From: Octopus bimaculoides
Taxonomy: Eukaryota
DNA: 64,000 bases
Direction of reading: 5' to 3'
Assembly (NCBI RefSeq): GCF_001194135.2
Contig: NC_068995.1
Coordinates: 50,092,852 to 50,156,851, forward strand
Of this stretch, positions 1-23,794 are shown piece after piece. Position 1 is the first letter of the stretch. Each line of letters begins with the position of its first letter. Below the pieces are notes generated by a model. The model did no database searches and was not told where the DNA came from. It saw only the letters and a list, made by a program, of their open reading frames with translations. Position numbers and translations under genes: made by a program.

Positions 1-119
1 TTTACAAATAAAAAAAAAATTCAGATGTAAAGTATGTTTGGCATTTTTCTCATATCAGTTAACAAAGACATGTAGTACTTTCGTTTTTCTATACGAGGCG
101 GTACCATGGCTAGTGAGGT

Positions 120-268
120 AATTTTGAGGCGTGGCTATTGTTTATTGAAAGCTATATATCTTTTAATAGCACTTTCGATTATCTGCTCTTACATTCCTCA
201 CTCGATTTGTAAACATTTATTCGAAATTTGCGCCAGAACACACACATACGCAAAAATATATATTGCAG
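120..268 (+). ncRNA. Cassette 1 candidate non-coding exon (5' part degenerate)
   Basis: 20-mer at 179-198; donor CAG|GTGAGT with GT at 269-270; the GGAATG arm is absent; 5' boundary approximate. Confidence 0.4.
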
Positions 269-1099
269 GTGAGTAGAGATTCAGTCACTTCTATTTAAGC
301 CTTGATCTCAAATTTGCTCGTAAATTCATAATAAACATAACTTTTGATGCAGTTTTCTGTGTCCATATTCAACTAATTGGATTTTTTGTCTCTTAAAATG
401 TATATACAGTATGTTATCTGCATACTGCAGATAACATGTCTTTAGATATTTAGGTGATTCGAGATTCACTGAGTCAATCAAACTAAACCACTTTGTATAA
501 TCTGTAGGAAAGAAGCGTATTACGAATTATTATCTGTAATATATTTCTTCCAAAAAGCTGGTATTGATCAAATATTTAGGTGTTTCACATTGAGAGATGA
601 CATTTTATAAGTGCAATTTTGATATAAATCTCACTTTCCTTCGCGTTTTAATTGGTTATACTATTTTATGCACTTGAGATACAGAAGACCTGGTATCGAT
701 GTTAAAACAGGTGAGTGATGATGACTAGATCATGGTTTAAAAATATTAAAAAAACATTCAAGTTGAGTTTATGATTACATATAACATGTTCTCTACTTTT
801 ACGTATCTGTTTGCATCTACCTAACAGGGCATTTTCTTTCTACTATTTAATTCTTAGTTCGGTTTATATACTGTTTATGCGGCTGTGTGAGTGTACTCGT
901 TTTGATAAACTACAGAATACAATTTCTCTGCTATTTTTGACTTTTAGAGTCGATTTAACTTCAATTCATAAAATTTGCTGGCAAAGTGAATTCTAGATGC
1001 AAACTGCATGCGAATATATAAAATTATAACTATTTTCAGTCGACTCTAGTGTCCCACAACGTTCACTTTCTATCTCCCGTCCTCTTCCTTCTAAACACA

Positions 1100-1510: not shown

Positions 1511-1854
1511 GAAATGGATGAAGTCACATGTATAAAGCTTGTATATATGTGGCCATGTAATTTTTGAAGTTATTTGTGTTTTACGAATTAAACAAGACAA
1601 AAATGTTCTGCATATAGTTCGCAAACTTTTCTATATAGTGGTTGTTTTCCAGTTGATAAGGCAGCTCCCCATCGGATAACAGTGGGGATTGAATTAACAC
1701 CCACTGTGAAATTTAGACTGGGAGTTTGCGACTGTAAATCTACTATAGGAAGTTAATATCTGAGAGGAGCAGTTCACAAGGGTGGCGTGTCAGGATTAAT
1801 ATCGATTGAATCATACAATTATACGATTAATAAAAGTTATCTCATATCAAAGTC

Positions 1855-2020
1855 AATTATTGAGAGTTATTGACGCATCACAAACTATTGATTTGTGAAG
1901 CGAGAATGGAATGCGGAAATCAAATAGCTTAGCAACAGTCTACAAGTTACCTGCTCTTACATTCCTAACTTGTTTTGTAATCACTTATTCTAAATCGGCA
2001 AGAGGACGAATTCAGCCGTA
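1855..2020 (+). ncRNA. Cassette 2 candidate non-coding exon (no donor at the homologous position)
   Basis: TCAATT Inr-like site ~1853-1858; GGAATG arm; 20-mer variant at 1947-1966; lower stem 1890-1904 pairs with 1969-1982. Confidence 0.4.
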
Positions 2021-3433
2021 TCAACATTCTACAGAGTTTCAGTCTGAAATTTGAGATCAGTTTACAATTTGATATAACTTGCTCTCCTCATTTTGTATAT
2101 CTACTTCCACCTTACAGGTTAATTTAATTTCTTCTTAAATAATTTTCTATGCAATCTATGGATTGTTTATGGCCTGTGAGTGTACACGTGTTGATCCGCT
2201 CTTACATTCCTAACTTGTTTTGTAATCTGAGTGGACTGTAGCAGCGTCAAATAAAGTGTCTTGCTCAACGACAGAGTATTTTCAATGTGACAGAATATTT
2301 TTCACAACTGTTCATAGAAAATATAAATTGATCCTAAACTAAACAAATTCTAAATTAATCTGTAGCTGTGTTAGCATTTCGGTTTGTAATTTTCCGTTAA
2401 CTTGTGAATGCAATTAGTTTATGAATTTTGACTATTGAATTTTTCAAAATTCAAGATTTCTGTCTTTGCTTTATGGTTTATTCAGAACGAATGACTTACG
2501 TTTGATCTTCGCAGATCCTCTGCCTTATTTCAATTTCTATCAGTTACAGACTGCTGAAGTATTCACGAAGAACAAAATGCATTTTTTAAATATTAGTTGG
2601 CAAATGCGTACATTTTCATTTCATGTGTTTTATTGTCTCTTTTTATAATATAATCATGGGAAGATATAAAGCTACACAGTTTATAATTAACGTCTTTCTG
2701 TATCCATATTTTGGTCAGTTAGAGAATAGTCAATTGGGATCCAATAAGTGAATTTTAATTGCTTCACCTTCTAAAATCTATATGAAAAGAGAATTCTATA
2801 ACCTATAAACATTTGTGTTGTCTTTCCAATAATTTGTGGTACCAAAATATTTAGATATTTCGCATTGGTTTACAATATTTTGTCGGTATACTGTCGATAT
2901 CAATCTAGATTAAAGATGAGAAAATTTCTTTCCTATTTCTCCATACAAATTTAAAATGAACATTTTATCGAATGAATCAGTATTTGTATGTTCATTGTGT
3001 TGCCGTCAGAAATATTCCATTGTCTTCTGAGGTATACTACGTGTGTAAACATCGTTTACAACATTTTGCAAAGAAGTGTCGAAAGCTATTTATATGCTTT
3101 AAAAATAACAAGATTAAAGTGAGTTTTGCATCTATCTTACTAATGTTTGTTTGTGGTGATTTTACTGAAGCTATAGCGGCCCCCACCACTGAGCGACTTT
3201 TGTACATTCTGATAAACAGTCGTATTGTACAGAGAAAATTTGCCGCGACAATCAGTACGTCAAAATATTGCGTAACACCCAACCTGAAATCTAAACCGTA
3301 TACTAGTAATCGTGTTTTTCTCTGTCTGTGTTAAATGGACTTGAGAGCAATGAGGTACCGCTAAGCATGTCAGGCCTGATATCGTTTAAATCATAATGTT
3401 GTACTATGAATTAAGTTATTATATATTAAAATC

Positions 3434-3601
3434 AATTATTATGAGGTATTCATCTATGATCGACAACTGATTTGTGGAACGGGAATGGAATGTTTATGTC
3501 ATCATAGTTTATGGAAAGCCCGTAGTTGTTGAGGAGTTATCTGCTCTTACATTCCTAACCCGTTTTGTAATCATTTATTCTAAATCGGCGTCACATAACA
3601 G
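3434..3601 (+). ncRNA. Cassette 3 candidate non-coding exon
   Basis: TATGAAT at 3405, TCAATT Inr-like A at 3434 (29 bp later), hairpin 3469-3572, 20-mer at 3537-3556, donor CAG|GTGAGT at 3602. Confidence 0.55.
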
Positions 3602-3681
3602 GTGAGTGAAACTTGGATCAAAACTCTACGAACATTTTGTCTGAAATTTAAGATAAATTTATAGTTACATATAACTTGTTT

Positions 3682-3734
<53 letters not shown>

Positions 3735-4738
3735 TTCTCTCTCTTTCTCTTTTCACCATGCAGGATAATTTGTTACTTCTTAAATAATTTTCTGTACAAC
3801 CTATGTATTGTTTATATTGCTGTTTGGTAAACGTGAGCAAATACTGATAAATTTTCTTTAACTTCTCGATATTTGAATTCCAATGAGTCAATTTAACTCC
3901 ATCAGTTCATGAATTCTGTGTGCAAAGAGAATTGTATGTTAACTACATATGAGTAAATAGAATTATAACCTACTTTGTGTTTAAGTATTTCATATCAAAG
4001 CATAATATATTGTCAATTCCGTGTCAATAAACATCTGACTATTCTAGAATTAAACGACTGTACTATATTATATATATTTGGGGAATGACGGATTAGGAAA
4101 CATTTCTAACCATTTATCATTTGGTGTCATCGATCTAAACTGAATTTTATACCTGATTCTTACATGTTTCGGAAAGAGAATTTTCAATGTGATAATGTTT
4201 TTTTTTTTTGTTTTGTTTTTTTCTTCTTCTGTTCATAGAAAATATAAACTGAATCTCTCAGTAAACTAATATGTAACTGTGTTAGTCTTTCGGTTGATAA
4301 TTTTCCGTTGTTTTGTAGACACAATCATTTTATAAACTTTGGTGAACGATAAATTAAAGAATTTTTCAAAACCCACTATAGTAATCGCGATTCACCTATT
4401 GGGGTTTATTATTTAAGCTTACGTCGATTCCTCCGTGGTGTTGTTTTGCATTAATAATAGAATAAATGTATACAAATTATAAAAATAATTAAAAAAATAT
4501 ACAGTACTGTTTCTACTTCGCGGATTAGAATGTAACACCCTCGATAGTCGAGAGATTACTGTACTTCTGTTTTTGTTTGTATGGTGGAATTGTAACTCTG
4601 GTATTAGCAGATACATTCCCTTTACCTCCTCTTCGTCCATACCAATCTAATTTGACCGTTTTCTTAAATGAATCTGTATTTGTGCAATCTTTGTGTTACC
4701 TTTAGGAAAATTTCGTAGTTTTCTGAGAACGTCTAGAT

Positions 4739-5013
4739 CAGGGGTTTTCAAACTGTGGTCCGCGGACCACAGGGGGTCCGTGGACAGCAAATACTTTTTA
4801 TGGGCAATTTGATTTTATATATGTTTTTTAATCGAAATCTTTTAATTGACAATAAACCTATTTGCTAAATACTGTTAAGTAAATAAATGTAAAAATATAT
4901 GTTATTTTAAGCAAATATTTATGTTTAAATTTCGTAAGCGTTTATAAGGGGGTCCCTAAGGTAAAGTCTGAAATATAAAGGGGTCTGCAAGTTTAAAAGT
5001 TTGAAAACCCCTG
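4739..5013. mobile_element. Non-autonomous hAT (Charlie/Buster-type) MITE
   Basis: Perfect 16-bp TIRs CAGGGGTTTTCAAACT; 8-bp TSD GTCTAGAT at 4731-4738 and 5014-5021 (NTCTAGAN target typical of Charlie/Buster). Confidence 0.9.
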
Positions 5014-5452
5014 GTCTAGATTGTTTGAACTTTTTGTTCAAAACGTTGTAACGTAATTTCTGAAAGTTATTTGTGTGTTTTACTAATTTAAGAAGGCACA
5101 AAAGTTTTGCATCTCGCTTGCTAACGTATGTGATTATGTTCAAGTTGATAAAGTGGTTACTGAAAGCCTTAACCACTGAGCCGTTCACTACAATATGTGA
5201 CAGCGACCACACTCAGCAGCTCTTGTACATTTGTACTTCTAAGAAACATTTTCACTATGTAAAGAAAACCGCAGTCGGAATCGATGCGTCAAAGTATACG
5301 TTAACGTCTAAATTGAAAAGTAGCTCGGATACTTTGTTGAAGTAACTTAACGGCAAAGAGATGTTGTTTAACTGGATGATGTGTTGGGCCCGTTATAATT
5401 TTAATTAAAGTCGGAAAATTGTGATATTGCTAAAATTCATTACAACGAAATC

Positions 5453-5620
5453 AAAACTTAAGAGGTATTGACCAAACACCAACAACTGGAGTATGAAGCG
5501 ATAATGGAATGCGTGTCTGATGTAGGTTTAGAAAGGCTTGCAGTACTTGATGAGTTATCTGCTCTTACATTCCTGTTTCAGTTTCAAAATATTTATTCAC
5601 AATCTCCGTAAGAACACTTC
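5453..5620 (+). ncRNA. Cassette 4 candidate non-coding exon (donor deleted)
   Basis: aatggaatg arm, 20-mer at 5555-5574, lower stem tgaagc/gtttca; the AG|GTRAGT block is missing before ctgaaat. Confidence 0.4.
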
Positions 5621-6846
5621 AAACCACCTCTTTCTGAAATCGAAGTGTAACTTATAATTAAATATTTTCACCGAAAAGGATATCTCCTTTCTCTTAGATA
5701 AATTTATGTACAATCCATCCCTTGTTTATGTGGATGTGTGAGTTTACGCGTTTTCTTCAACTCCAGTAACTTTTCTCTACTATTTTATATATTTGGATTT
5801 CAATGAATCAATTTAGCATCATAAAATCTGTATTAGAAAATATGCGTACTGTACATAAATATATGAAATTTTAGCGAATTTTCTCTCTTTCAAAAGAACC
5901 AATATTAACTAAATATTTGAATATATTTGTATATATATCAATTAAGTCAAAAGCCAATTTTGACAAATATTTAATATTGATTTACAGTATTTTGTTACTT
6001 TAATATTGATAAAAATAATAATAAATAGATGTTCTAGAATTAATCAACCATGTATATGATACATTTGTGGAATGACAGATCTTGAATTGCCGCTAATTAT
6101 TTATCGATCTCTTCAGTCTCAAGCGGGTTCAATACCCATTGTCTCTCAGACATCTCGGAAAGGGAATTTTAAATGATAGATTTTGTTTTCATCGTTGTTC
6201 ATCGGAAATTCATATCGAACATCTTAGTAAATTATTCGGGTAATTGCGTTAGTCTTTCGATTCTTAAGTAAAGGTAATTTATAAATTTAGGTGGAGACTT
6301 TGATGTAAATAATTTTTCAAAGCTTGGTTTCTGTTAATATATGTAAAAATATAAATAAATAAAATATTTAAACATTTCAAACTGAGTTACAATGTCGTTT
6401 TTTTGGTGAAGTGTGGATATAAATATAAACATTATTAATTTGAGTTTCAGTAGGGAGTCGTAAATGTGTGAGAATTTCTTTCCTCTTTGTTCGTACGCTT
6501 TTAATTTCGCTCTCTTACTAAATTCATTTGTAAAGTTTTACTGTTGTAGTACATCTGCTGGAAAAATTCCCTTGTTTTCTGGGTACCACCTACTGTATAT
6601 ACTTTGTATACAATATGGTGCAAAGTAATTATATGCGTTACTAATTGCAAAAGTTAAATAAATAAACCGTGTAAAGAAACAAAACAGTAGAAAGTAACTG
6701 GTCGACAGATTCTGTTCCCGCCTTACAGAAAAGGAACTTCACATCAAGGCGGTGCCATTAAAGTGGGCGGTACCTTAGGCCTGATACCATTTTAATGAAA
6801 GACAGAAGAATCTGCTATAAATAAAAAGTTACTTCATATTCAAATC

Positions 6847-7009
6847 GATTATTGTGAGGTGTTGATTCATCACCAAGTGTTTGTGAAACGAGTATGGAAT
6901 GTACATGAACAATAGCTTTTAGTAATTGACGAGTTATCTGCTCTTACATTCCTGAGTCGGTCCGTAAACGTTTATTCTAAATCTCCAAGAACATCAAATT
7001 GTATCGTAG
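6847..7009 (+). ncRNA. Cassette 5 candidate non-coding exon
   Basis: TATAAATA at 6816-6823, Inr-like TCGATT ~31 bp later, hairpin 6875-6973, 20-mer at 6934-6953, donor TAG|GTGAGT at 7010. Confidence 0.55.
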
Positions 7010-7489
7010 GTGAGTGGAAACTCGTGATTTTTCTTTTTTTAAATTTTTTATTTAAATTCCTCTGAAATTGAAAAATGATTTATGATTACTTGTAACCTAT
7101 TCTCTAAATTTTATGATAGTTATTTTCACCGAACAGAATAATTTCTTTCTCTTAAATACTTTTCTATACCACTTATGTATATTGTTTATGTGGCTGTGTG
7201 GAAGCACATGTTCTGATCAGCTGCAGGTGATATTTTTTTTTCTGTAGATTTCAATGAGTTAATTTAACTTCGTCCATTCATGTAATCTGTCAGCAAAGTA
7301 GGTATACAACTGCATATAAATTGAATTATAACCATTTATACGCTGTTTCTTATAACTAGTCCTCGCCAAATATGTCGATATTTCGTATCGAATTACAAAA
7401 TTTTATCAATTCAATAATGCTCAAAAAAAAAAAAAAAAAGGAAAAAAGATCTAGCTATTCCAGAGTTAATTGACCTAAATGTGCAGTCA

Positions 7490-7790
7490 TTATTGTGTAG
7501 TAAGAAATTTGTTTGCCAACTAAATGGTTTCGGGTTCAGTTCCCTTGCAAGGTACCTTGGGCAAGTTTCTTATACTATGCCTCCGGGCCGACCAAATCTT
7601 CGTGTGTGAATTTAGTAAACTGCAACTGAAAGAAAACCGTCACATGTGCGTGTATGTTTCGCCTGACAGCGAGTGTTTGTTTGTTTGTTTGTTTACGTCA
7701 CCGTAATTAAGCAGTTCGGGAAAAGAGCCCGATAGAATAAGTACCAAACTTTTAAAAAAGTTCTAGGGTCGATTTATTCTTTTAATAATA
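7490..7790 (+). mobile_element. tRNA-derived SINE, family A (CORE-like CCTTGGGCAAGT block), degenerate
   Basis: Same family as copies at 46748, 53975, 60552 (+) and 42890, 47390 (-): gggttcagt(t/c)cc...ccttgggcaagt...ccgaccaaa...gatagaataagtacc. Confidence 0.75.
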
Positions 7791-7804
7791 ATAACAATAA
7801 TAAT

Positions 7805-8040
7805 CCTTTCTACTCTAGGCACAAGGCCTGAAATTGTAGGGGAAGGGGCGAGTAGATTACATCGACTCTAGTGTTTCACTGATACTTAATTTATCGACCT
7901 CGAAAGGATGAAAGGCAAAGTCGACCTCGGCAGAATTTAAACTCAGAACGTAGCGACGCGCGAAATAACCGCTAAGTATCTCATCCAGTGTGTTAACGAT
8001 TCTGCCAGCTCGCCGCCTTAATAATAATAATAATAATCGC
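7805..8040 (-). mobile_element. tRNA-derived SINE, family B
   Basis: Reverse complement reads aaggcggcgagctggcagaatcgttaac...gaggtcgactttgcctttcatcctttcgaggtcgataaattaagta; matches copies at 33610, 35460, 44290, 44500, 62365. Confidence 0.8.
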
Positions 8041-8227
8041 ACCGTGTAAAAATAAAATGCGGTTGGAAACGACGCCTCAATAAACTATTAACGTCCGACC
8101 GGTTCCTAGTAATTGTAATTCTGTTAAGGACTAAAATTGTCGTTTAAGAAGGCGGCATGTTGGCTGTGATATGGTTGTGTTTATGTCATAAAATTGTTAT
8201 CAATATAAGCTACTTTCTATTCAGATC

Positions 8228-8382
8228 GATTACGAAGTATTGATCTGTCACTACCATCTAAGGTGTGGTATTATAGATTAATAAAAGCCCCGTAGTAGTT
8301 GATGAGTTATCTGCTCTTACATTCCTATCTCTGTAAACTTTTATTCTGACTTTCCGAGAGAGAATTTCATATCGTATTGCAG
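8228..8382 (+). ncRNA. Cassette 6 candidate non-coding exon
   Basis: TATCAATA at 8198, TCGATT 30 bp later, perfect 20-mer at 8307-8326, donor CAG|GTAAGT at 8383; GGAATG arm degenerate. Confidence 0.5.
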
Positions 8383-9000
8383 GTAAGTGAAGATTTTATT
8401 CATATTTTTAAAACGTTCCTCTGAAATTGTAGACCAATATATAATTACATATAACTTATTTTTCATTTTTTTTTTCAATTAGCAAGATTGTTTCATTTTC
8501 ATATGATTCCCTATACAAATGTTTGTGTAGTATTGTTTGAGTGTACATGTTTTGATGCTTAGACATTTGAGTGAATTTTATCATCACTTCAGTAAAAAAA
8601 ATTGTATGAAAAGGAAATTAAATATGAACTACATCTTGTCAATTTAATGTTGATTTAGAAAGAAAAAAGAAAAAGAAACTCACGGTACAATGTTATTCAT
8701 TCGTGACATGTAAGAACTATAATCTTAACTTTGTTGTCGTCATCTAAAGAAGATTTGGTATTTCTTTCTTCTGTCGTGTCTGAATAGGAATTTTAAACGC
8801 GATTTCGGGATTGTTCATAGAAAAATGGAATTGAACATCCAAATACATTAATCTGTGTAGGTTGGACAGTATTGCGGTCAAAATTTTCTTGTTTATTTTC
8901 ATATATATGTATGTATATGTATATATATATATATATATACACTTACATACATATATATGAAAATAAACAAGAAAATTTTAACTGCAATACTGTCCGACCC

Positions 9001-9038
<38 letters not shown>

Positions 9039-9355
9039 ATACAATCAACTTATAAACTTTGTTGTAGAATATGCGGTAAATAATTTATCAAATATGAGGT
9101 AAATAATTTATGAAAGCTCCAAATTCCTGTTATTTGATTACGGTTAAATCAAAAGAAAGGAGTTATGCGTACGATTTTTTTAGACCTACATTATTTCGGT
9201 CAGTCGAACTGAGTTATTAGCAAGTGTAATTTTGTAAAGGGAACGCTAGTGCCAGAAACGTTGTAATCTCGCGAGCGACCTGTTGTTGGGCCTGATATCG
9301 TTTTAATTAAAATCAGAAAATATTTCTACTATAAATATATCTAACCCCTGTATAC

Positions 9356-9531
9356 AAATTTATAGTGAGCTCAACAATTACTGATGTGTGAAATATGGAA
9401 TGAGAGAGAAAGTGAGGTATGTTTTAACAAAGCTTTCAGTAGTTCCTTAGTTATCTGCTCCTGCATTCCTGCTTCGATTTTTTAAAGAGTTATTCTCAAT
9501 CTTCAGCAGAACACATCAAATCATATCACAG
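9356..9531 (+). ncRNA. Cassette 7 candidate non-coding exon
   Basis: TATAAATA at 9330-9337, atggaatg arm, 20-mer with 2 substitutions at 9451-9470, donor CAG|GTGAGT at 9532. Confidence 0.5.
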
Positions 9532-10446
9532 GTGAGTGGGGATTCATTTATCTTTTTAAAACATTCTTCTGAAATTGAAGACTATTTCATAATTACATAT
9601 AAGCTAGTCTCTACATTTGTGTGTATAGTTTCTTCTCTTAAATAAACTTCTTTATAACCTTGTTCATATGGATGCGTGAGTACGAACGTTTTCAACTCCA
9701 GATAACTTTTCTTTGATATTTACATATTTGTATTTTAACGAGTCGATTTAATTTCATCACTTCATAAAATCAGTATGCAAAGAAAACAAATGTACGCGAA
9801 TTGCATGTAGATATATAGAATTATAAGAAATTTTATTCCTTCACAAAACTAGTATTAACTAAATTTTTATATTGATTAATCCGAAAATTAGTATTTACGA
9901 AATTTTTTACAAATGATTGGCAATATTTTGTTCATTCGTTATTGATAAAAATCTGGAATTTCTAAAGTTGATTGGCTAGAATAATGTTACATTTCTTCCA
10001 ACATTCGAAGCACTTCAAATTTTCACCAGATTATTTCCAAGAAATGCATAATTAAAGAAGTTACATCAAAGTAGAAAATTTAAAAAAAAAAAGTGGTGGA
10101 AGTTTGAAATGCTTCAAGTGGTTGGAATAAATTTAATATGATCCATTGATTATGCTATTCGATATATTTGTGGAATGCCGGGTTTGGTATTATTGATTAC
10201 AATTTATGGACTTGATATCTTCATCTCAGGAGTATTCAGAACCTAGTCTCTCAGACGTCTCGGATAATGATTCTAAAAGTGGCGGAATTTCTTTCGTAGA
10301 AAATCTAAATTGAACGTCTTAGTAAATTTTTCTGTGATTGGTTAAGTCTTTAGATTGGAAATGTTTGTTGTTTTGTGGATAATCACTTTATAAACATTTG
10401 TGTATTTTTTCAAAGCTCACATTTGTATATCTTCATGTACTTTTTC

Positions 10447-10850
10447 CAGGGACGTGCCGCCTGGGTAGGCAGTGCCTACCCTGCATAAAATAGATCGATA
10501 GTAACATTTTCCTTGTATGGCAAAATACGCACCTAATTCAATTTAATTACGAAGGTTACTCTACTTTGCATAAAATGCAAAATATCTTTTTTTTTTTTTT
10601 TTTGTAGGGTAGGTAGGTATAATTCGCCCCTGTCTTTCAATTTCAGTATTTAAGCCACACATAGTACTGCTGTAGTACACGTACTGCGTACATTCCTACA
10701 ACGTTTTCTTTACGTGCTATAAAAGCAGAAGTAATTCTGCCTCCAACTCAGTCGCGCATCTGTGTTTCGCTTTTTCTTTCTTTTTGCGTGTTTTACTACA
10801 TAAACGTCACCAACTGCCTACCCTGAGTAATTACTGACGGCACATGCCTG
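10447..10850. mobile_element. MITE with imperfect TIRs (probably hAT)
   Basis: CAGGGACGTGCCGCC at the left versus reverse complement CAGGCATGTGCCGTC at the right; internal repeat actgcctaccctg/agtgcctaccctg; flanks actttttc/attttttt resemble a decayed 8-bp TSD; interrupts the array unit. Confidence 0.6.
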
Positions 10851-11428
10851 ATTTTTTTCAAAGCTCAAATTTGTGTTAACCAACATTGTAGATCTAATGG
10901 GCAAAATATCAATATATTTCAAACTGACTCACGGTATTTTGGTTGTACGCTGTTGACCTATTTCTAGACTATACTTATTTAAGTTTCAGCAGGGAATCGT
11001 AAATGTGAGAAAAGTTATTTCATCTTTGTAAAAAAAATTATTTGACCGTTTTACTAAAATTCATCTGTAGTATGGTCTTAGTATTACTGTTAGAAAAGTT
11101 TCATTGTTTTCTGGGTACAACCAGCGTAATAAACTTTGTAAACAACGTAATGCAAAGTAATTTTTGGAAGCAAATTGTATGCTTTACAAATCACTAAAAT
11201 AAAGAAAACTATTCGCACTGCGTAAAGAGCATTGCAGTAGTAAAAGGCTAATTTTCAGATTGTGTTAGCACCCAGTCCGTAATCTCGATCGAGTACTAGT
11301 AACCTGAATCTGGTTAAGGAACATAAAGCCAAAAATGCTGTTAAGCTGGGATGCATGTTTGACCTGATATCGTTTTAATGGAAATCAGAAAATTTTGCTA
11401 TGAATACAAGTCATCTCAGATTCTAATG

Positions 11429-11607
11429 AATTATAAAGATATTGATTATTCACCAACTTCTGATGTGTGAATCGAGAATGGAATGTGTATATCATGTACG
11501 TTAACAAAAGCCTTTAGTACTCGACGAGTTATCTGCTCTTACATTCCTGAATCTCTGTAAGCATTTACTTTAAATTTTTGTGAGAATAACATCAAGTCAA
11601 GTCGGAG
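11429..11607 (+). ncRNA. Cassette 8 candidate non-coding exon
   Basis: TATGAATA at 11399, Inr-like site 30 bp later, gaatggaatgt arm, perfect 20-mer at 11529-11548, donor GAG|GTAAAT at 11608. Confidence 0.5.
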
Positions 11608-13744
11608 GTAAATAGAGATTCATCCATTTTTTGGGGGTTTTTTTTTTTTCAAAATTTTCACAGAAATTAAAGTATATAATTACATATAATTTGTTCTTCA
11701 TTTTTGTGAATCTGTCTTCACCTAATAGGATAGTTTCTCTTAAATAATTTTCTGTACACCCTGTTTATGTGACTGTACACGTTTCGATCAATTATAGATA
11801 ACTTTACTCTGCTATTTAGATTTCAATGAGTGAATGTAACTCCATCACATCATAAGTCCTGTATGCATCGGCAATTACATATGAACTACATTTTATCAAT
11901 TCTGTGCTGATAAAAATCTAGCTTCTCTAAATTTGAATGATTATACTATGTAATACACTTGTGGAATGACAGATCGGTTATTGTTAGATCTTGATCAATT
12001 GTTAATTACGGAAGTATGACATTGAGAATAGAATGTGAATTTCATGACTCAGAAATATAACCGGAGTTGTCTCCCGTACCTTCAAAAAAATAATTGAAAG
12101 CTTTTTTCTTTTAATTTATCCGTACCTTGTATTTCAAATTGTTCGAGAAAGGCGGAATATATACAGAACAATGTTATTTGACATCGTAGAACGTTCGTTA
12201 CATAATTATAACAGCTTGCAGATAAATAGCGTTTTTTGTCGGCAAGTACGATATGAAAAGTTATTTCCCCTTACATTCTTGAATAAGTCTGTAACCGGTT
12301 ACAACACTTGGAATCATTGTAGCTTGGTTGTGAAGGAGTCGCTAGTTTGTTGCCCGACTTACTTGAAATAGCAGCGAAATTTCCTTTAAATCACAACAGA
12401 ATTTCTTGGGTAAGTGCACAACTAGAAATAAAATGGTTGACAAATGATCTAATTTGTTCTCACTGTGGCACCTAATAGGGACTGTTTCACTTTTTTTTTT
12501 TTTAAAGCCTTATGTATTTTATATGTAGCTGAAGAAACTCTGGTACCCATATTTTACTATTTTCTAGATTGTTTTCCTCAACGTAGTCACTGTGTTTTGA
12601 TGATGTCGACTGAAACGAGGTTGTTGTGTATCAATTGTTGAATAATTTTCAAATCTTTGTTCATAGAAACGGTGCAATTCTGGTGCTGTGTGTCGTTGTG
12701 GGAAGGAATGAGACATCTGTGTAGAAGTGTAGCCACAGGTCAAGCCTGATGCAGCAGACTTAAGATCAAAAGAATGGTTGAGGAATTTTTTTGTGGGAGG
12801 ATGAGGTTTCTGGCAGTGTATATGCTATTAGCAGCAAGTAATCAGCCACAGATATTTTTGTGTAGATGTTGGAGGAGGGGCTAAAGAAGATAGTATTATA
12901 TCTCCACAGCTGAGAACATTCATGTATTAGGGTTTCATTGGTAAATCACTTAGGCAATCCTAGATAATGACAAAGATACACCAGCTCCAACCTGACAACT
13001 GAATCTCAGAATGGCTGTGTGGTTAAGGAGTTTGCTTTACAACCCACATGATCTTAGGGTCAGTGTTGCTGCACAGCATGGTGTGGGCCTAATTTATTCT
13101 ATTGCTTTAGATCAACCAAGCCTTACGAGTGGAATTGGTAGACAGAAGCCCATCATGTGTGTGAGTGTCTAAATTGTCTTTCCTACTTCTTAAATAAGAT
13201 GGTCTCAGTCAAAAAGCAGTGTTGTCATACTTACATTCTTGATAAATATTATGCATTCTCAAAGCAGTGGAATTAAAATTAAAAAAAAAAAACTTCATAA
13301 AAAAATAAAGGTCGGTGTCAGGAAGGGCATCCATCTATAAAAATATCTCACTTATCCATAGATGTACAAAAGGTACTCATCTAACATAGATTGTTCATTT
13401 ATTCATTTAACATCTCATTCTACAATGTACATCAAACTGTCTTTAATATTATGGATTGCCTGGTTGAAAAAGAAACATTTTCAGTACAGTTTATTTTTGT
13501 TTGTCGGTTTGTTTTTGTTTTAATTTTAAATTTAAGTTTAAGGAATTTTGTCATATTGTGCAAACTGCTCTCCAATTAGAGACAAGTGGCTTGAATAATT
13601 TACCAGATTTTTTTTCTTTGATTATTGATACAAATCGAGAGATAGATTCAAAATTCTTAAAAGAAATCTGACAAACAAATAAAGTTTTGAAAATTTAATA
13701 TCTTCATTATGAAGTGAACAGACAATATATATATATATATACAT

Positions 13745-14357: not shown

Positions 14358-16691
14358 GGTTGGTGAGAGAAGGAATTATGAAGCTAATTAGATGTATAGT
14401 ACTCTACAGAGGTTAAATTGTAGGGTAATGGATTGGAGAGGTTCCAATACTGCTGAGACAAATTTTGCCCACCGCCCTTCCAAAGTTGATGAAGTTGCAG
14501 TCAAGTACTGGTGTTGATCTAATTGATTGTCTCTTTCTTCCAGATGTGTGGCATTTTGCTTATATTAGGAATAACTAATCAAAAGAAATCAAGATCCACA
14601 TTAATACAAAAGTATTAAAAAAAAAAAAAATGTGTGATCAATAAGTTTCAAGTGAAGATTAAGATCACCTTGCATGAATACAGATAGCATTAAAAAAATC
14701 TAATTTTGATTAATCTTGACTTTTAATTGAAGGCCATAATCAATTTAATCAACCTCAATACTTGACTGGTGCTAATTTCATTGCTTCTCTCTCACCAGAA
14801 GTAGGAAAGAAATTGTTCTAATCACAATATTTGATTACAAGGAGTAATCATCGAACATCATGTTAATAAAAATAGTTAGAGGAAGTCTCTGCATATGTTA
14901 TTTAAAAATAAATAATTTATTAAATAACTAAAATCCTTCAAATTTTATACAAAGCAAACAGGAAGGCCAAAAAAAAAAAAAAAATGGTGGTAGAAATATG
15001 TTGGCAATTATTCAACTCTAAAGATGAGATGAATTATCTGAAAATTCATTTCAAACATTCAATTTAAGTTCACTTAAATATTTCACTGTGTGGCTAAGCA
15101 CAGAAGATATCTAAATTTAACTTAGCTCTAATTTTAATACAAAAATACTTGCTATCTTATCCCTACCACAGATAGGACAAGGATATTATAATGGGCATCA
15201 CTACCCACTCCATCCATCAAATAGTTCTAACTACAGTTTTTTTTGTTTTTTTTTTCCTGTTTTAAATGGTTTGGTCTAGAGAAACCTTCCAGACATAGTG
15301 CATTGTATGTTCCTGAACAACTAACTGCAAGAAAAATATTGGCAGGGAAGAAATTGTAAAGATTTGAAGCTCTGGGAAAGAAAAACAAAATGTATAGTCC
15401 AGAATCGAAACAAAGTGGAATTGATCTCATGATCTACAAGCAGCTCTGTTCATGCCAGTCCTATTCTTTCTTAAATGATCATTTACAGAATTCCTTTTCA
15501 TTTAATGGTTTATCATAGGCATCACAGTCATTGTTGTAACTTTTACTTTTCCATGCTTGCATAGATCAGATGAGATTACTCTGGGGCAGAGTTTTCCATG
15601 GCCAGATATCCTTCCTGTTGCCAACCCTTACCTGTATCCAGGCAAGGCAATAAATCTCCCAGTGTATCGAACAACGGCCAGCCCGCACATGGTTACACGA
15701 ACAACTGGAAACAAACAGGACAGTCTAAATTTTGTTTGCAAAGATCGTGCATAGGTCAAGAAGCTTGGACACGTTTCACTGCAGTGGACAGTGAGGCATT
15801 TGAGTTACATTTACCTGTTTCACTCAGAAACCACAGGTCAACTTGAGCTAATAGCAGCAGACATTTGTCCAGCATACCATGCAGTCAGACTGATACCGAA
15901 ACCACGGGACTGGGAAGCAAATTGCACCTACATAAGTATGTTCTCCTGATTTACTACAATTTTGATATCAAGTGTGAATCTGTTTAACATATATTTAGAA
16001 TTCCACTAAAAACTTGTAATTTTAATTTCATCGGGATGATAAGTCTTAAGTTAAATTATTTCTAATTAAGATAAAATGGGAAAGAACTGCTTTAAAATGA
16101 AATTGGTGTTGTTTTGGTTGTTCCTTCTAACAATAGCTGCAATAGCCATATTTTACTTGTTTTATCAAGCAAGTGCAATTCACTTTAGCTGCTAGGCAGG
16201 CTGTTACTGTAAGACATGGCTTGCATAATAAAATAGCCTTTTTGTAAGAGTTGTTTTGACTATTTATAATGAACAACATTTGAATCTACACTGTTGAAAT
16301 AATACAAACATACGTGTCTTGCATAGCCAAAGCAACAACTACAAAGCACTTTCATACAGCGCAAGGAAGGATTAACAACTTGGATTTGATAAGATGTGAA
16401 TGTTGTGATGATATTCAATAGAATTTACATTTTAAGTAATTGTTTTCATCAAATTATGTATACTAATAATGATGGATTATTTCCTTTTGTAAGTAATTAT
16501 AATTTGAAAGAAGTTTAGTCCAGTTAAGATAATGATAAAGTGTAATCCAATAAGTAATCTGCTGTAGGATATCTTAAGAATGAATCAGATAAAAACAGCT
16601 TCTTCAATTTGTGTGAAAGGTGCTAATTTGTTATAAGAAAATTAAAGTTGATTTCCTCTTTCATTATTCATTATTCGAGAAGTTTAATTTT

Positions 16692-16796
16692 TCACAAACC
16701 AGAAACTGACAAAGACCAGAGTCCAATTGTACTCAACCAGATAAATTCTTCCAATTTATTCTTGTGTTTCATCTGAATATGTTCCAGGAAGCCATC
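16692..16796 (-). CDS. Bcl-2-family protein, terminal coding exon (end of BH2 + hydrophobic tail anchor): DGFLEHIQMKHKNKLEEFIWLSTIGLWSLSVSGL*
   Basis: Strong acceptor ttttattttccttaatgcag|GAT. DGFLEH continues the BH2 motif (compare Mcl-1 RGW|DGFVEFF) in phase 0 with the donor after TGG at 23173. C-terminus is hydrophobic. Confidence 0.8.
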   Translation of the reverse strand, partial: DGFLEHIQMKHKNKLEEFIWLSTIGLWSLSVSGL

Positions 16797-16940
16797 CTGC
16801 ATTAAGGAAAATAAAAACATATGAGAAAATAGAATACAAAAAATAGAAAAATATGCAATTTTGGAGACTAGAGTACTCTTAAAAAAAGGTACATCCCTCT
16901 TTTCCTCACAACAGAAGCTTAAGGTTGAAATAGGTAGCAT

Positions 16941-17100
16941 AACCCTTTAACATTCAGATTACTCTGCCAAGTATATTTATCTATTCACTGTTTTGAATTA
17001 ATCATACATTACCTCATGGCTTTGAGAATTCAATGTGACTTTTTATAATGACATTGTAGGGTAGGTGTGAGAGGCTAGATCTGGCTGATATAAATATAAA
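16941..17100 (+). mobile_element. Fragment of a dispersed repeat starting taaccctttaacattcagat (possible TTAA-type MITE end)
   Basis: Related segments at 57951-57985, 58265-58370 and 58930-58975 (gaattaatcatgcatt..., ttgtagggtaggtgtgaga). Confidence 0.4.
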
Positions 17101-17367
17101 ATATTTTCAACTTTCTAAAAGTTTAGCTCCCCACCCCCTATCTTGTTCTAACTAACAAAAAAAAAAAAAAAAAAAAAANNNNNNNNNNAAAGTCCTTTTT
17201 TTCAGATCACTCATTTTATTGTGGCACATTATGGTATAGAGTTTCTCCCTGTTGTGTTGGTAGCCCTGACAAAGTTGTAATATCACGTTTATAACCGCTC
17301 CATTTTTACAATGTTATGCTTTTTGTATACTTATTTATCAATGCCTTAGAACAAAATTTCGACTGGG

Positions 17368-17682
17368 ATACACTGGGATGGAAAATTGCTCCCAGCACTC
17401 AGAGGCATTGAAAAGGTTGATAGACTGGCAACAATAGTAAATTTTCAAGGGAAGGAGCCATTGTTGGGAGTCTCTGAAATTCTAACATCTTTAGGAGAAC
17501 AGCAAGCCATGGCCGTTTACCAAGCAGTGAAGAAATGGGGTATAACCGACAAAATTCAGGCACTTTGCTCTGATACGAAAGTAAGCAACACAGGTCGAGT
17601 GAATGATGCCAGTACAAATCTAGAAAAGTTGTTCAATCGCAACCTGTTGTACTTCCCTTGCCATCATGCTGACACTGTATAG
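17368..17682 (+). pseudogene. DDE DNA-transposase remnant (hAT-related, HWDGK type)
   Basis: In-frame IHWDGKLLP...EKVDRL...LLGV...GEQQAMAVY...WGITDKIQALCSDT..SNTGR...LLYFPCHH: two catalytic Asp motifs and CxxH; truncated on both sides. Family assignment is from recall of the motif. Confidence 0.75.
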
Positions 17683-19727: not shown

Positions 19728-19821
<94 letters not shown>

Positions 19822-21787: not shown

Positions 21788-22007
21788 GTAAAATACATTG
21801 TACATTTAATACACATTAGAGATGCCCATAAAAGGACATCTGACCCGCTAGAAAGAGCAGCCAAAGCTCTACACCACAAATTTTTTATTCCTTTTCGAAA
21901 TTATCCCTAATTTTTTTGTGGTGTAGAGCTTTGGCTGCTCTTTCTAGCGGGTCAGATGTCCTTTTATGGGTATCTCTAATGTGTATTAAATGTACACTGT
22001 ATTTTAC
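21788..22007. repeat. Near-perfect inverted repeat, 93-bp arms, 34-nt loop
   Basis: Arm 21788-21880 is the reverse complement of 21915-22007 with 2 differences. Confidence 0.95.
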
Positions 22008-22034
22008 TATTTGTATAATAGATAATAAACTATA

Positions 22035-22159
22035 CAGGGTGTCCACAAAGTCTGGGTACATGGGGATTAACAAACTTTAAGAAATTATTATTTCTTATAT
22101 TTAATTGTTTATGTCTTGATTTTATTTACTCCATGTCCCCAGACTTTGTAGACACCCTG
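22035..22159. mobile_element. Tc1/mariner-type MITE (125 bp)
   Basis: 29-bp TIRs CAGGGTGTC(C/T)ACAAAGTCTGGG(T/G)ACATGG; TA on both sides. Confidence 0.9.
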
Positions 22160-23688: not shown

Positions 23689-23794
23689 CTTCAGGGATAT
23701 TAACTGAACGCCTGTTATTTCTTTTGGGGGGAAACGATAATAACTCACTCAATGTAAGCTAAAATGACTTCAAAGTGTAATGAAAGCGCTCTCC

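What the first reader, a model, noticed from the sequence alone, without database searches (positions are those of the whole stretch)
1890..11570. Plus-strand RNA hairpin with compensatory changes around an invariant ~20-nt block
Seen: GGAATG pairs with CATTCC of the 20-mer in units 2, 3, 4, 5, 7 and 8. The lower stem differs in sequence but keeps pairing: unit 3 gatttgtggaacggg (3469-3483) with cccgttttgtaatc (3559-3572); unit 2 gatttgtgaagcgag (1890-1904) with cttgttttgtaatc (1969-1982); unit 5 aagtgtttgtg (6875-6885) with cgtaaacgttt (6963-6973), 11 contiguous pairs; unit 4 tgaagc with gtttca. Many pairs are G-U, which works only on the plus strand, the same strand as the splice donors. The conserved block is 20-23 nt with sharp edges, the size of a mature miRNA. 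Inference, three options: (a) a new miRNA family with 3p mature ~UUAUCUGCUCUUACAUUCCU, weakened because only ~13-15 of 22 positions pair by hand; (b) a protein-binding 5'UTR/ncRNA element displayed in a large internal loop; (c) a DNA composite site, since TTATCT is a GATA motif and CATTCC/GGAATG are TEAD (MCAT) motifs.
Basis: partly seen in the sequence, partly recalled or inferred. Interest (0 to 1): 0.8.

Follow-up and report, generated by a model that had tools for sequence, protein, structure and literature searches.

The report
Invariant 22-nt box in octopus repeats
An octopus genome segment holds at least nine tandem copies of what look like a promoter plus a short non-coding first exon; every copy keeps the same 22-23-base box under strong selection, but the proposed RNA hairpin or microRNA around that box is not supported.

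Summary
The sequence facts hold. TTATCTGCTCTTACATTCCT occurs 9 times, on the + strand only, all within 179-11548 (0 expected by chance), and a diverged tenth copy lies at 12261-12280. The copies mark a tandem array of ~1.1-2 kb paralogous units. The box (really GAGTTATCTGCTCTTACATTCCT) is 92% identical between units against 61% for the rest. It is also kept in Octopus sinensis and O. vulgaris: 1 change in 69 positions.

GGAATG does lie upstream in six units and the quoted stems exist. The claim of compensatory change fails:
- Covariation is no better than shuffles.
- RNAalifold gives -2.9 kcal/mol with a covariation penalty.
- Cognate stem halves pair no better than non-cognate ones.
- Only unit 3 folds clearly better than shuffles.
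- Three units keep the box without the GGAATG partner.

It is not miRNA-like.

Each unit reads as an upstream element, a TATA box, an initiator-like site, a ~165-180-nt non-coding leader holding the box, and a consensus splice donor (8 of 10 modules). My best reading is a conserved sequence element of duplicated promoter/leader-exon modules. It is probably read as DNA (GATA + TEAD motifs, or a poly-zinc-finger site). An RNA-level linear site, which includes a miR-1 seed match, is the main rival. Function and splice target are unknown.

The parts
1..279 (+). Unit 1 (cut by the window edge). The pre-box segment at 1-83 is homologous to other units and its GGAATG has decayed. It is followed by the U4 insert, the box and a donor CAG|GTGAGT at 266-274.
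84..170 (+). 3'-truncated U4 snRNA retropseudogene inserted just 5' of the box of unit 1, flanked by a 7-nt target-site duplication ACTTTCG (77-83 and 171-177).
   Evidence: Rfam U4 30.3 bits (gathering 46), E 3.5e-5, high posterior only for U4 nt 1-~80; duplication read
179..198 (+). Box, unit 1 (20/20 match; the 5' GAG extension is not kept).
686..841 (+). Partial unit holding only the donor ACAG|GTGAGT (~708-716) and the intron start; no box.
   Evidence: nhmmer E 2e-10
1781..2134 (+). Unit 2: GGAATG at 1908-1913 and box at 1944-1966 (T>C inside the GATA motif). The donor is deleted.
2186..2227 (+). Patch copy of the box 3' part plus the downstream flank of unit 2, lying inside unit 2's own tail.
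3362..3780 (+). Unit 3: upstream element 3373-3391, TATA-like 3405-3411, GGAATGGAATG 3482-3492, box 3534-3556, donor CAG|GTGAGT 3599-3607. This is the only unit whose hairpin clearly beats shuffles.
5375..5693 (+). Unit 4: GGAATG 5506-5511 and box 5552-5574 (23/23). The TATA is degenerate and the donor is deleted.
6766..7151 (+). Unit 5: TATAAAT 6816-6822, initiator-like TCATATTC ~6838-6845, GGAATG 6896-6901, box 6931-6953, donor TAG|GTGAGT 7007-7015.
8151..8500 (+). Unit 6: box 8304-8326 (23/23) and donor CAG|GTAAGT 8380-8388. The GGAATG segment is absent, also in O. sinensis.
9274..9655 (+). Unit 7: upstream element 9289-9307, TATAAAT 9330-9336, GGAATG 9397-9402, variant box 9448-9470 (CTCCTGC, shared by three species), donor CAG|GTGAGT 9529-9537.
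11349..11741 (+). Unit 8: upstream element 11361-11379, TATA-like 11399-11405 (TATAAAT in O. sinensis), GGAATG 11480-11485, box 11526-11548, donor GAG|GTAAAT 11605-11613.
11950..12420 (+). Diverged last unit ('unit 10'): box-equivalent TTATTTCCCCTTACATTCTT at 12261-12280 (identical in three species) and donor TGG|GTAAGT at 12407-12415.
14900..23760 (-). Neighbouring Bcl-2 family gene (two coding exons), convergent with the array. It is context, not part of the element.
   Evidence: Pfam PF00452 E 1e-8; XP_014772509 cluster; mRNA contig L002

Best explanation
The window (Octopus bimaculoides) starts inside a tandem array of at least 9-10 paralogous units, 1.1-2 kb apart, all on the + strand.

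Each intact unit reads as an RNA polymerase II promoter plus a non-coding first exon:
- a ~45-bp upstream element (GGCCTGATATCGTTTTAAT..AAATCAGAAAA);
- a TATA box (CTATAAAT);
- an initiator-like TCA(T/G)AT about 25-30 bp further on;
- a ~165-180-nt leader with no conserved reading frame;
- a consensus 5' splice site (CAG|GTGAGTG).

The invariant box GAGTTATCTGCTCTTACATTCCT sits about 85-105 nt into this leader and 45-70 nt before the donor. It is the one part of the unit under very strong purifying selection.

I think it most likely works as a conserved sequence element that a sequence-specific factor reads on double-stranded DNA. That factor could be a GATA factor (TTATCT = AGATAA) together with a TEAD factor (CATTCCT). 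Because the spacer is also invariant, a multi-zinc-finger protein with a ~20-bp footprint is an alternative. The element would mark or activate each promoter module, much as the conserved sequence element does in clustered protocadherin promoters.

The upstream GGAATG is a second, inverted TEAD-type motif. The hairpin it can form with CATTCC in RNA is a by-product of that inverted repeat.

Shown: the array, the selection on the box, its independence from the hairpin partner, and the absence of coding or structural covariation. Inferred: the transcription start, use of the donors, and DNA-level rather than RNA-level reading.
For: - Array and unit homology.
- Box conservation: identity 92% against 61% elsewhere, and the longest invariant run is 22 nt against 11 for the next.
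- One-to-one orthologous units in O. sinensis and O. vulgaris, with 1 change in 69 box positions against 7.6-11.7% in flanks (P 0.03 and 0.002). The duplications therefore predate the species split and the box has been held since.
- TATA boxes lie 103-132 bp upstream of the box and are better TATAAAT matches in O. sinensis.
- Consensus donors are present at the same alignment column in 8 of 10 modules.
- There is no common reading frame over the box.
- The box is intact in units 1 and 6, which have lost GGAATG. It is intact in unit 1 despite a U4 retropseudogene insertion right next to it. It is intact in unit 4 (23/23) and one change off in unit 2, both of which have lost the splice donor (unit 4 has also lost its TATA). 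This argues that the box works independently of the hairpin and of a spliced leader.
- GGAATG/CATTCC occurs at 0.88 per kb in the array against 0.1-0.2 per kb in the rest of the window, with three conserved positions per unit.
- No complementary 'partner' for the box exists on either strand elsewhere in the 64 kb.
Against: - There is no expression, transcription-start or footprint data, so the promoter/exon reading rests on motifs alone.
- The box lies downstream of the predicted start site, inside the transcript, so an RNA-level role is equally natural.
- Two 6-7-bp factor motifs do not need an invariant 7-nt spacer and flanks. A sharp 22-nt block is more typical of nucleic-acid pairing.
- Single changes hit the GATA motif (unit 2) and the TEAD core (unit 8 of O. 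sinensis and O. vulgaris), so neither motif is absolutely required in every unit.
- The downstream exon that the donors join is unknown.
- The age of the donor losses in units 2 and 4 is unknown, so their intact boxes could simply be young.
Confidence: 0.4

Rival explanations
1. The box acts in the transcribed leader as a linear (unstructured) RNA site. It would be bound by a trans-acting small RNA or an RNA-binding protein. Its 3' half UUACAUUCC is complementary to nucleotides 2-10 of miR-1 (a 7mer-m8 site extended by two pairs), and the whole box is pyrimidine-rich (UCUGCUCUUACAUUCCU), like PTB-type sites. The leaders would then be regulated or sponge-like non-coding RNAs, or regulated 5'UTRs.
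For: - The box lies between the predicted start site and the donor.
- A ~22-nt length with sharp edges, every position fixed, fits base-pairing better than factor motifs.
- The octopus Mir-1 8mer target site is ACATTCCA (supplement of PMC9699675), and the box carries ACATTCC in 8 of 9 copies.
- The substitutions seen in otherwise intact boxes are all transitions.
Against: - Beyond nucleotide 10 there is no complementarity to miR-1 (own comparison with the miR-1 sequence from memory).
- Position 1 is not opposite an A.
- O. sinensis and O. vulgaris unit 8 carries a seed-breaking C>T.
- Units without a donor or TATA still keep the box.
- In most units CATTCC is predicted to be masked by the upstream GGAATG.
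- No partner was found in the window.
- No expression data are available.
Confidence: 0.3
2. This is the reader's option (b), or the headline: a functional plus-strand RNA hairpin. It has a lower stem and a GGAAUG:CAUUCC helix, and presents the 5' part of the box in an internal loop for a protein.
For: - The GGAATG:CATTCC helix is in the minimum-free-energy fold of all six units that have both halves.
- 78% of cells are paired in the proposed register against 40-49% in slid registers.
- Mean z on exact bounds is -1.35, and unit 3 reaches z = -3.4.
- There is one true G-C to A-U exchange between units 2 and 3.
Against: - Covariation is not above shuffles, and RNAalifold gives -2.9 kcal/mol with a covariation penalty.
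- Cognate stem halves are no better than non-cognate ones (113 of 720 permutations).
- The lower stems use different, non-homologous registers in units 4 and 5.
- The minus strand folds almost as well (mean z -0.99).
- Units 1 and 6 lack the 5' arm, and unit 10 has it ~230 nt away, yet all keep the box.
- The O. sinensis unit 8 change in the lower stem is uncompensated.
- In full-leader folds the box pairs with the donor region instead in units 5 and 6.
Confidence: 0.1
3. This is the reader's option (a): each unit is a miRNA precursor whose 3p product is the 20-mer. A variant would be a minus-strand miR-1-seed miRNA, AGGAAUGUAAGAGCAGAUAAC.
For: - The block has the size of a mature miRNA.
- Its reverse complement shares nucleotides 2-10 with miR-1.
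- Tandem clusters of paralogous miRNAs do exist.
Against: - There is no ~22-bp duplex. Only 6-8 contiguous box nucleotides pair with one partner, and the rest pair with different segments in each unit.
- The opposite arm is not conserved.
- z-scores are mostly above -2 on both strands.
- There are no Rfam miRNA hits over any box, even at E<5.
- Three units lack the other arm.
- The sequence is absent from the text and held supplements of the octopus miRNA survey. Those files hold target sites rather than mature sequences, so this is weak.
Confidence: 0.03
4. The box is a 'selector' sequence that pairs with a single distant 'docking' site in the pre-mRNA, so that only one leader exon of the array is spliced in. 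This would resemble the Dscam exon-6 docking/selector system.
For: One nearly identical ~22-nt sequence per repeated exon, close to a splice site, is the signature of selector sequences (own knowledge of Dscam1).
Against: - No complementary site lies on the + strand in the 64 kb. The best duplex is -21.3 kcal/mol, inside the range of shuffled boxes (-19.6 to -25.8).
- The exons look like first exons with their own TATA boxes and no conserved acceptor. Promoter choice alone would then make them mutually exclusive.
Confidence: 0.05
5. The box has no function. It is kept identical by gene conversion, or the units are a decaying repeat.
For: Tandem repeats do undergo conversion. A 32-nt patch copy of the unit 2 box region exists at 2186-2227.
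Against: - Conversion tracts would homogenise flanks, but identity drops from 92% to ~60% within a few bases on both sides.
- Unit-specific variants (unit 7, unit 10) are stably inherited in three species.
- Orthologous boxes change less than their flanks.
Confidence: 0.05

Closest known systems
Conserved sequence element (CSE) of clustered protocadherin variable-exon promoters in vertebrates; more loosely, UGT1A-type arrays of alternative first exons
   Same: There is a tandem array of same-strand modules. Each module appears to have its own promoter and a first exon ending in a 5' splice site, and each carries one ~22-bp element far better conserved than the rest of the module.
   Different: - The exons here are short and non-coding, not ~2.4-kb coding exons.
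- The box lies ~115 bp downstream of the TATA box, inside the predicted leader, rather than upstream of the start site.
- It has no CGCT/CTCF-like motif.
- No constant exons have been identified.
- The sequences are unrelated.
miR-1/206 target site (ACAUUCC) and long conserved miRNA-binding sites in non-coding RNAs (e.g. the miR-7 site of Cyrano)
   Same: The box has a perfect match to miR-1 nucleotides 2-10 inside a ~22-nt ultra-conserved block of an apparently non-coding transcript.
   Different: There is no 3' supplementary complementarity to miR-1. The site is repeated in paralogous leaders rather than present as a single site. Binding is untested.
M-CAT (TEAD) plus GATA composite regulatory sites of muscle and cardiac promoters
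   Same: There is a canonical CATTCCT and a canonical AGATAA (reverse strand) 7 bp apart. Further conserved GGAATG motifs occur in each unit.
   Different: The known composites do not require an invariant spacer. The tissue and the factor are unknown here.
Animal miRNA clusters and SNORD115/116-type tandem non-coding host-gene repeats
   Same: Tandem kilobase-scale units each carry a short invariant RNA-sized sequence next to non-coding exons.
   Different: There is no miRNA-like hairpin. C/D boxes are not conserved: TGATGA precedes the box in only 2 of 8 units, and CTGA follows it in 2.

Membership tests
Animal miRNA precursor | A ~60-80-nt hairpin in which the ~22-nt mature sequence forms a near-continuous duplex (>=16 bp) with the other arm | tested here: not met
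   Only CATTCC(+1-2 nt) pairs consistently. The longest run of box nucleotides paired to the 5' side is 4-9, with different partners per unit.
Animal miRNA precursor | Folding energy clearly below shuffled controls | tested here: not met
   z = -1.55, -3.38, -0.64, -1.91, +0.50, -1.11 on hairpin bounds chosen in the structure's favour; -0.1 to -2.8 on fixed 120-nt windows.
Animal miRNA precursor | Both arms conserved, loop variable | tested here: not met
   Only the 3' block is invariant. Of the 5' arm only GGAATG is kept, and it is absent in units 1 and 6.
Animal miRNA precursor | Small-RNA reads with a uniform 5' end and star reads with 2-nt overhangs; or a match to a catalogued family | not testable with these tools
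   Rfam shows nothing over the boxes. MirGeneDB and small-RNA data are not available. The held supplements of PMC9699675 do not contain the sequence, but they list target sites, not mature miRNAs.
Structured cis-regulatory RNA hairpin | Base pairs maintained by compensatory substitutions above background | tested here: not met
   2 double-change pairs against 1.9+/-1.2 in shuffles; covariation term +1.56; cognate vs non-cognate, 113 of 720.
Array of alternative promoters / first exons with a conserved sequence element (protocadherin-like) | Tandem same-strand modules, each with a promoter and an exon ending in a 5' splice site | tested here: met
   Sequence level only. TATA(-like) boxes lie 103-132 bp 5' of the box, an initiator-like motif follows, and MAG|GTRAGT donors occur in 8 of 10 modules at one alignment column. 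There is no expression evidence.
Array of alternative promoters / first exons with a conserved sequence element (protocadherin-like) | One short element per module much more conserved than the rest | tested here: met
Array of alternative promoters / first exons with a conserved sequence element (protocadherin-like) | All donors spliced to common downstream constant exon(s) | not testable with these tools
   - Candidate acceptors exist inside each unit (~110-190 nt after the donor, AG kept in 6 of 8).
- Another candidate lies at ~32744, in front of the conserved 91-aa ORF.
- None can be assigned without RNA data. Exact-ORF look-ups in public assemblies found nothing.
Array of alternative promoters / first exons with a conserved sequence element (protocadherin-like) | Variable exons encode protein; the element lies upstream of the start site and binds CTCF | tested here: not met
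   There is no shared reading frame. The box lies downstream of the TATA box and has no CTCF-like GC-rich motif (sequence). This is an analogy only, not membership.
Spliced-leader RNA genes | The invariant leader lies directly 5' of the donor GU, in a short (~100 nt) RNA with an Sm site | tested here: not met
   The box ends 45-70 nt before the donor and the sequence between them is variable. Two units have no donor. No conserved Sm site is present.
C/D box snoRNA (antisense element = the box) | Conserved C (RUGAUGA) and D/D' (CUGA) boxes flanking the antisense element, plus a terminal stem | tested here: not met
   TGATGA precedes the box only in units 4 and 6. CTGA follows it only in units 5 and 8. 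There is no Rfam snoRNA hit over the box.
Dscam-type docking/selector system | A docking site complementary to the repeated selector within the same pre-mRNA | tested here: not met
   The best + strand duplex in the 64 kb is -21.3 kcal/mol, within the shuffled-box range. A site outside the window cannot be excluded.
miR-1 target site | Watson-Crick match to miRNA seed nucleotides 2-8 | tested here: met
   ACATTCC is present in 8 of 9 copies, and the octopus Mir-1 site is ACATTCCA. The unit 8 orthologue in O. sinensis and O. vulgaris reads ACATTTC. Binding and effect are not testable here.
U4 spliceosomal RNA (unit 1 insert only) | Full-length match above Rfam's gathering score, with an intact U6-pairing 5' end, 3' stem-loop and Sm site | tested here: not met
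   30.3 bits against a gathering score of 46. Only nucleotides 1-~80 align with confidence. The insert is flanked by a 7-nt duplication, so it is a truncated retropseudogene. Unit 5 shows no U4 similarity.

The most novel reading that the evidence does not exclude
The array is a cephalopod counterpart of a promoter-choice cluster. Many near-equivalent promoter/leader-exon modules each carry an invariant 22-nt 'choice' element, read either by a dedicated poly-zinc-finger protein or by a trans-acting RNA. Transcription from the chosen module runs antisense across the adjacent Bcl-2 gene and splices into the conserved BH3-motif-bearing 91-aa gene 20 kb downstream. That would couple a pro-death and a pro-survival gene in one locus.
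Probability: 0.07. Interest if true: 0.8.

Novelty: new variant of a known kind. Interest (0 to 1): 0.4.

Why it matters
If the reading is right, this is an invertebrate example of a tandem array of alternative promoter/first-exon modules held together by one ultra-conserved ~22-bp element. That architecture is best known from vertebrate protocadherin clusters and is tied to promoter choice.

It also gives a sharply defined, testable sequence: 23 nt, with natural variants in units 2, 7, 8 (other species) and 10. This can be used to find the octopus factor or RNA that reads it.

The location is also of interest. The array lies tail-to-tail with a Bcl-2 gene and upstream of a small conserved protein with BH3-like motifs, which could link it to regulation of cell death.

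If it is only a GATA/TEAD enhancer module that was duplicated, it is ordinary.

Tried and rejected
1. Protein coding. Stop-to-stop frames over the box differ between units and there is no common frame.
2. Known RNA families. Rfam at gathering thresholds found nothing in 64 kb. In E-value mode it found only the U4 fragment in unit 1 and low-complexity AT-palindrome hits at 8857-9002.
3. All units derived from U4. Rejected: U4 similarity is limited to an 87-nt insert with a target-site duplication in unit 1, and there is none in unit 5.
4. Pol III small-RNA genes (upstream element plus TATA). Rejected: T4 runs precede the box in units 1, 5 and 7, and consensus splice donors are conserved (reading).
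5. Spliced-leader genes, C/D snoRNA and a U7-like guide were considered from the sequence. Their defining boxes or sites are not conserved.
6. Branch point plus polypyrimidine tract. Only unit 4 has a suitably placed AG.
7. Box pairing with its own splice donor (U1-like decoy). Only unit 5 reaches p = 0.04.
8. Docking partner, or a target in the Bcl-2 mRNA. None found.
9. More distant homologues:
   - A literature string search gave 0 hits.
   - A translated-box profile search of 5.8 billion proteins gave 0 hits.
   - A metagenome scan of the 20-mer gave two chance hits in bacterial coding sequence.
   - Four exact-ORF look-ups for array ORFs in public assemblies found nothing.
10. A partial resemblance to the box at 28377 is not a unit (nhmmer found nothing there).
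11. A literature search for octopus alternative-first-exon arrays found nothing relevant.

Full report
**What is in the sequence.**
The 20-mer TTATCTGCTCTTACATTCCT occurs nine times within three mismatches. All copies are on the + strand and all lie in the first 11.6 kb: 179, 1947, 2192, 3537, 5555, 6934, 8307, 9451 and 11529. Dinucleotide shuffles give none, and there is no copy in the other 52 kb.

Alignment of the neighbourhoods shows that the copies are anchors of a tandem array of paralogous units 1.1-2 kb apart. These units are alignable over their whole length. A profile built from them finds:
- eight full units;
- a donor-only fragment at 686-841;
- a patch copy at 2186-2227;
- a strongly diverged last unit at 11950-12420, whose box reads TTATTTCCCCTTACATTCTT (12261-12280).

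The window begins inside unit 1, so the array may extend further upstream.

**How unusual the box is.**
The invariant stretch is really (G)AGTTATCTGCTCTTACATTCCT. It is the longest run of near-invariant columns in the ~1.4-kb unit, at 22 columns; the next runs are 11 (TTTCAATGAGT) and 9 (TCTGAAATT). Mean pairwise identity between units is 92% in the box, 61% over all other aligned columns, and 75% in the best other 23-column window. Identity falls to background within a few bases on both sides, which is not what gene conversion produces.

**Species and orthologues.**
The neighbouring minus-strand ORF (23149-23748) is a Bcl-2 family protein (Pfam PF00452). It falls in the cluster of O. bimaculoides XP_014772509, so the window is Octopus bimaculoides.

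The orthologous loci of O. sinensis (L001) and O. vulgaris (L007) align with the window at 80-88% throughout. They carry one-to-one orthologues of units 6, 7, 8 and 10. Three observations follow:
- The unit 7 variant (CTCCTGCATTCC) is shared by all three species.
- Unit 6 is identical in all three.
- Unit 8 has one C>T (CATTTC) in the O. sinensis / O. vulgaris lineage.

That is 1 change in 69 box positions, against 7.6% (O. sinensis) and 11.7% (O. vulgaris) in the flanks (P = 0.03 and 0.002). The duplications are therefore older than the species split, and the box has been held by selection since.

**The hairpin claim.**
GGAATG lies 51-68 nt upstream of CATTCC in units 2, 3, 4, 5, 7 and 8, and this helix appears in every minimum-free-energy fold. 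The evidence for a selected structure is weak:
- **Stability, fixed windows.** On 120-nt windows only unit 3 is more stable than shuffles (z = -2.8; the others run from -1.1 to +0.6).
- **Stability, exact bounds.** On bounds cut exactly at the proposed stems, which favours the structure, z is -1.55, -3.38, -0.64, -1.91, +0.50 and -1.11. The minus strand gives -0.57, -2.63, -0.06, -1.76, +0.12 and -1.04. The 'G-U pairs, plus strand only' argument disappears once composition is controlled.
- **Consensus fold.** RNAalifold gives -2.88 kcal/mol with a positive (penalising) covariation term, and one compensatory pair of 18.
- **Pair counting.** The inverted repeat is therefore real. But double changes, pair types and the covariation score are all at or below the shuffle means.
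- **Cognate test.** The 5' lower-stem half of a unit pairs with its own 3' half no better than with those of other units (-8.8 against -7.8 kcal/mol; 113 of 720 permutations as good). Only unit 3 beats shuffled or random genomic partners.
- **Register.** The lower stems of units 4 and 5 use registers that are not homologous to that of units 2 and 3.
- **Uncompensated change.** In O. sinensis unit 8 a lower-stem change is not compensated.

The decisive point concerns units that have lost the partner arm. Units 1 and 6 have lost the GGAATG arm, and unit 6 has lost it in O. sinensis too. Unit 10 has it ~230 nt away. All three keep the box.

In unit 1 an 87-nt, 3'-truncated U4 snRNA retropseudogene, with a 7-nt target-site duplication, sits right against the box. 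The box there is still 20/20.

What remains is an ancestral, decaying inverted repeat.

**The miRNA option.**
In the folds, only CATTCC plus one or two neighbouring bases pairs consistently. The rest of the 20-mer pairs with different segments in different units, or with itself. The other arm is not conserved. No Rfam miRNA model touches a box even at E<5. Neither the box nor its complement appears in the searched literature or in the held supplements of the octopus miRNA survey. Those supplements list target sites rather than mature sequences, so this last point is weak.

**What the units look like.**
Read 5' to 3', the conserved features are:
- a ~45-bp element, GGCCTGATATCGTTTTAAT..AAATCAGAAAA;
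- CTATAAAT (TATAAAT in units 5 and 7, and in all three O. sinensis orthologues);
- an initiator-like TCA(T/G)AT about 25-30 bp later;
- GATTATTG.GAGGTATTGA;
- TGTGAA.CGAGAATGGAATG;
- a variable stretch;
- AAAGCYTTTAGTA.TTGAYG followed by the box;
- TTTATTCTAAATC;
- CAG|GTGAGTG, 45-70 nt after the box.

The donor consensus is present at one alignment column in 8 of 10 modules. Units 2 and 4 lost it through separate deletions. An AG with a pyrimidine tract follows 110-190 nt later in 6 of 8 units.

No reading frame is shared over the box. The short uORFs starting at ATGGAATG end at different places.

This is the anatomy of TATA-type polymerase II promoters driving ~165-180-nt non-coding first exons. 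It is an inference from motifs. No expression data could be reached: four exact-ORF look-ups for ORFs in the array found nothing in public assemblies.

A Pol III reading (upstream element plus TATA) was dropped because T4 runs precede the box in units 1, 5 and 7. Spliced-leader, C/D snoRNA and branch-site readings fail on their defining motifs.

**What the box might do.**
On DNA it contains a canonical GATA site (TTATCT = AGATAA) and a canonical M-CAT/TEAD site (CATTCCT) 7 bp apart. These consensus sequences are from my own knowledge. GGAATG/CATTCC is 5-9 times denser in the array than in the rest of the window, with three conserved positions per unit.

On RNA, UUACAUUCC is complementary to miR-1 nucleotides 2-10. 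The miR-1 sequence is from memory; the octopus Mir-1 site ACATTCCA is confirmed. There is no further complementarity.

The box has no complementary partner elsewhere in the 64 kb on either strand. That speaks against a docking/selector scheme within this window and against an antisense target in the Bcl-2 mRNA. The box does not consistently pair with its own donor.

Two facts tip me slightly towards a DNA-level element:
- The box is perfect in unit 4, which has lost both its TATA and its donor, and is one change off in unit 2, which has lost its donor.
- It is indifferent to what happens to the upstream arm.

Two facts pull the other way:
- It lies inside the predicted transcript.
- All 22-23 positions, including the spacer between the two motifs, are fixed. 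That suits base-pairing or a long zinc-finger footprint better than two short factor sites.

I therefore put about 0.4 on a protein-read DNA 'conserved sequence element' of duplicated promoter modules. I put about 0.3 on a linear RNA site in the leader. The hairpin, miRNA, selector and no-function readings get small probabilities.

**Context.**
A Logan mRNA contig (L002) shows that the Bcl-2 gene has two coding exons on the minus strand, at about 23.7-23.17 kb and 16.8-14.9 kb. The plus-strand array (last donor at 12410) is therefore convergent with it, about 2.5 kb from its 3' end.

Further along the plus strand, an exon with a conserved acceptor (ttatttttgtag|GATTG, ~32744) carries a 91-aa ORF (32806-33081). 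It is annotated as hypothetical in O. vulgaris. Its C-terminal 55 codons differ from O. vulgaris at six codons, all synonymous. It contains two BH3-like motifs, QILRLLGDSF and RKLQLIADKF (my reading; no Pfam hit).

Whether the array's donors reach that exon across the antisense Bcl-2 gene cannot be decided here.

**Comparison with known systems.**
The nearest analogy is the clustered-protocadherin arrangement: tandem variable first exons, each with its own promoter and a ~22-bp conserved sequence element. It is only an analogy. Here the exons are non-coding, the element lies downstream of the TATA box, it is not CTCF-like, and no constant exons are known. The locus is not a member of any miRNA, snoRNA, snRNA or spliced-leader family tested.

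**Verdict.**
The invariant box and the array are real, selected and unexplained. I found them nowhere in the literature or databases I could reach. Interest is moderate, at 0.4, and rests on a future demonstration of what reads the box.

Noticed in passing
window 84-170 (duplicated ACTTTCG at 77-83 and 171-177): A 3'-truncated U4 snRNA retropseudogene (Rfam U4 30.3 bits, below gathering; the k-turn stem-loop and the U6-pairing strand are recognisable) is inserted immediately 5' of the box of unit 1. It separates the box from the rest of its leader.
   Followed up: yes
window 32745-33081 (+), ORF 32806-33081: A 91-aa ORF lies behind a conserved 3' splice site. It is 95% identical to an O. vulgaris 'hypothetical protein', and its C-terminal 55 codons show only synonymous differences. 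It carries two BH3-like motifs (QILRLLGDSF, RKLQLIADKF). This is possibly a BH3-only-type protein encoded next to a Bcl-2 gene. It has no Pfam domain.
   Followed up: partly
window ~14900-23760 (-): A Bcl-2 family gene (O. bimaculoides XP_014772509 cluster) has two coding exons and a ~1.8-kb 3'UTR. It is convergent with the array, and its promoter region at ~23.8 kb has a CCAAT box.
   Followed up: partly
window 1983-2060 and 5575-5640: Units 2 and 4 have lost the splice donor through separate ~45-55-nt deletions ending just before the conserved TCTGAAATT. Their boxes remain intact or nearly so.
   Followed up: partly
window 8856-9003: A 148-nt AT-rich perfect-type palindrome (74-nt arms, 92% complementary, no loop) lies in the tail of unit 6. 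It gives sub-threshold hits to several AT-rich miRNA families (best: mir-5014, 54.6 bits against a gathering score of 101). It is probably a low-complexity artefact or a foldback element.
   Followed up: partly
window 4732-5020: A MITE-like insertion with 23-nt terminal inverted repeats (TCTAGATCAGGGGTTTTCAAACT) lies in the tail of unit 3.
   Followed up: partly
window 21788-22007 and 22032-22162: Two long inverted repeats (93-nt arms at 98% complementarity, and 32-nt arms at 94%) lie inside the Bcl-2 intron. They are foldback or MITE-like elements that could form long hairpin RNAs.
   Followed up: no
window 413-437; also 9699-9706 and 11796-11802: The 5' half of the box (GTTATCTG) recurs as its reverse complement CAGATAAC about 230-270 nt downstream in units 1, 7 and 8. 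In unit 1 the two halves form a local palindrome, GTTATCTGCATACTGCAGATAAC. This second GATA-type motif has decayed in the other units.
   Followed up: partly
window 3681-3760: A long (CT)n tract fills the short putative intron of unit 3, just before the conserved AG.
   Followed up: no
window 4082, 6069, 10172, 11963: A third conserved TEAD-type motif (TGTGGAATGACAG) lies ~430-720 nt downstream of the box in units 3, 4, 7 and 8.
   Followed up: partly
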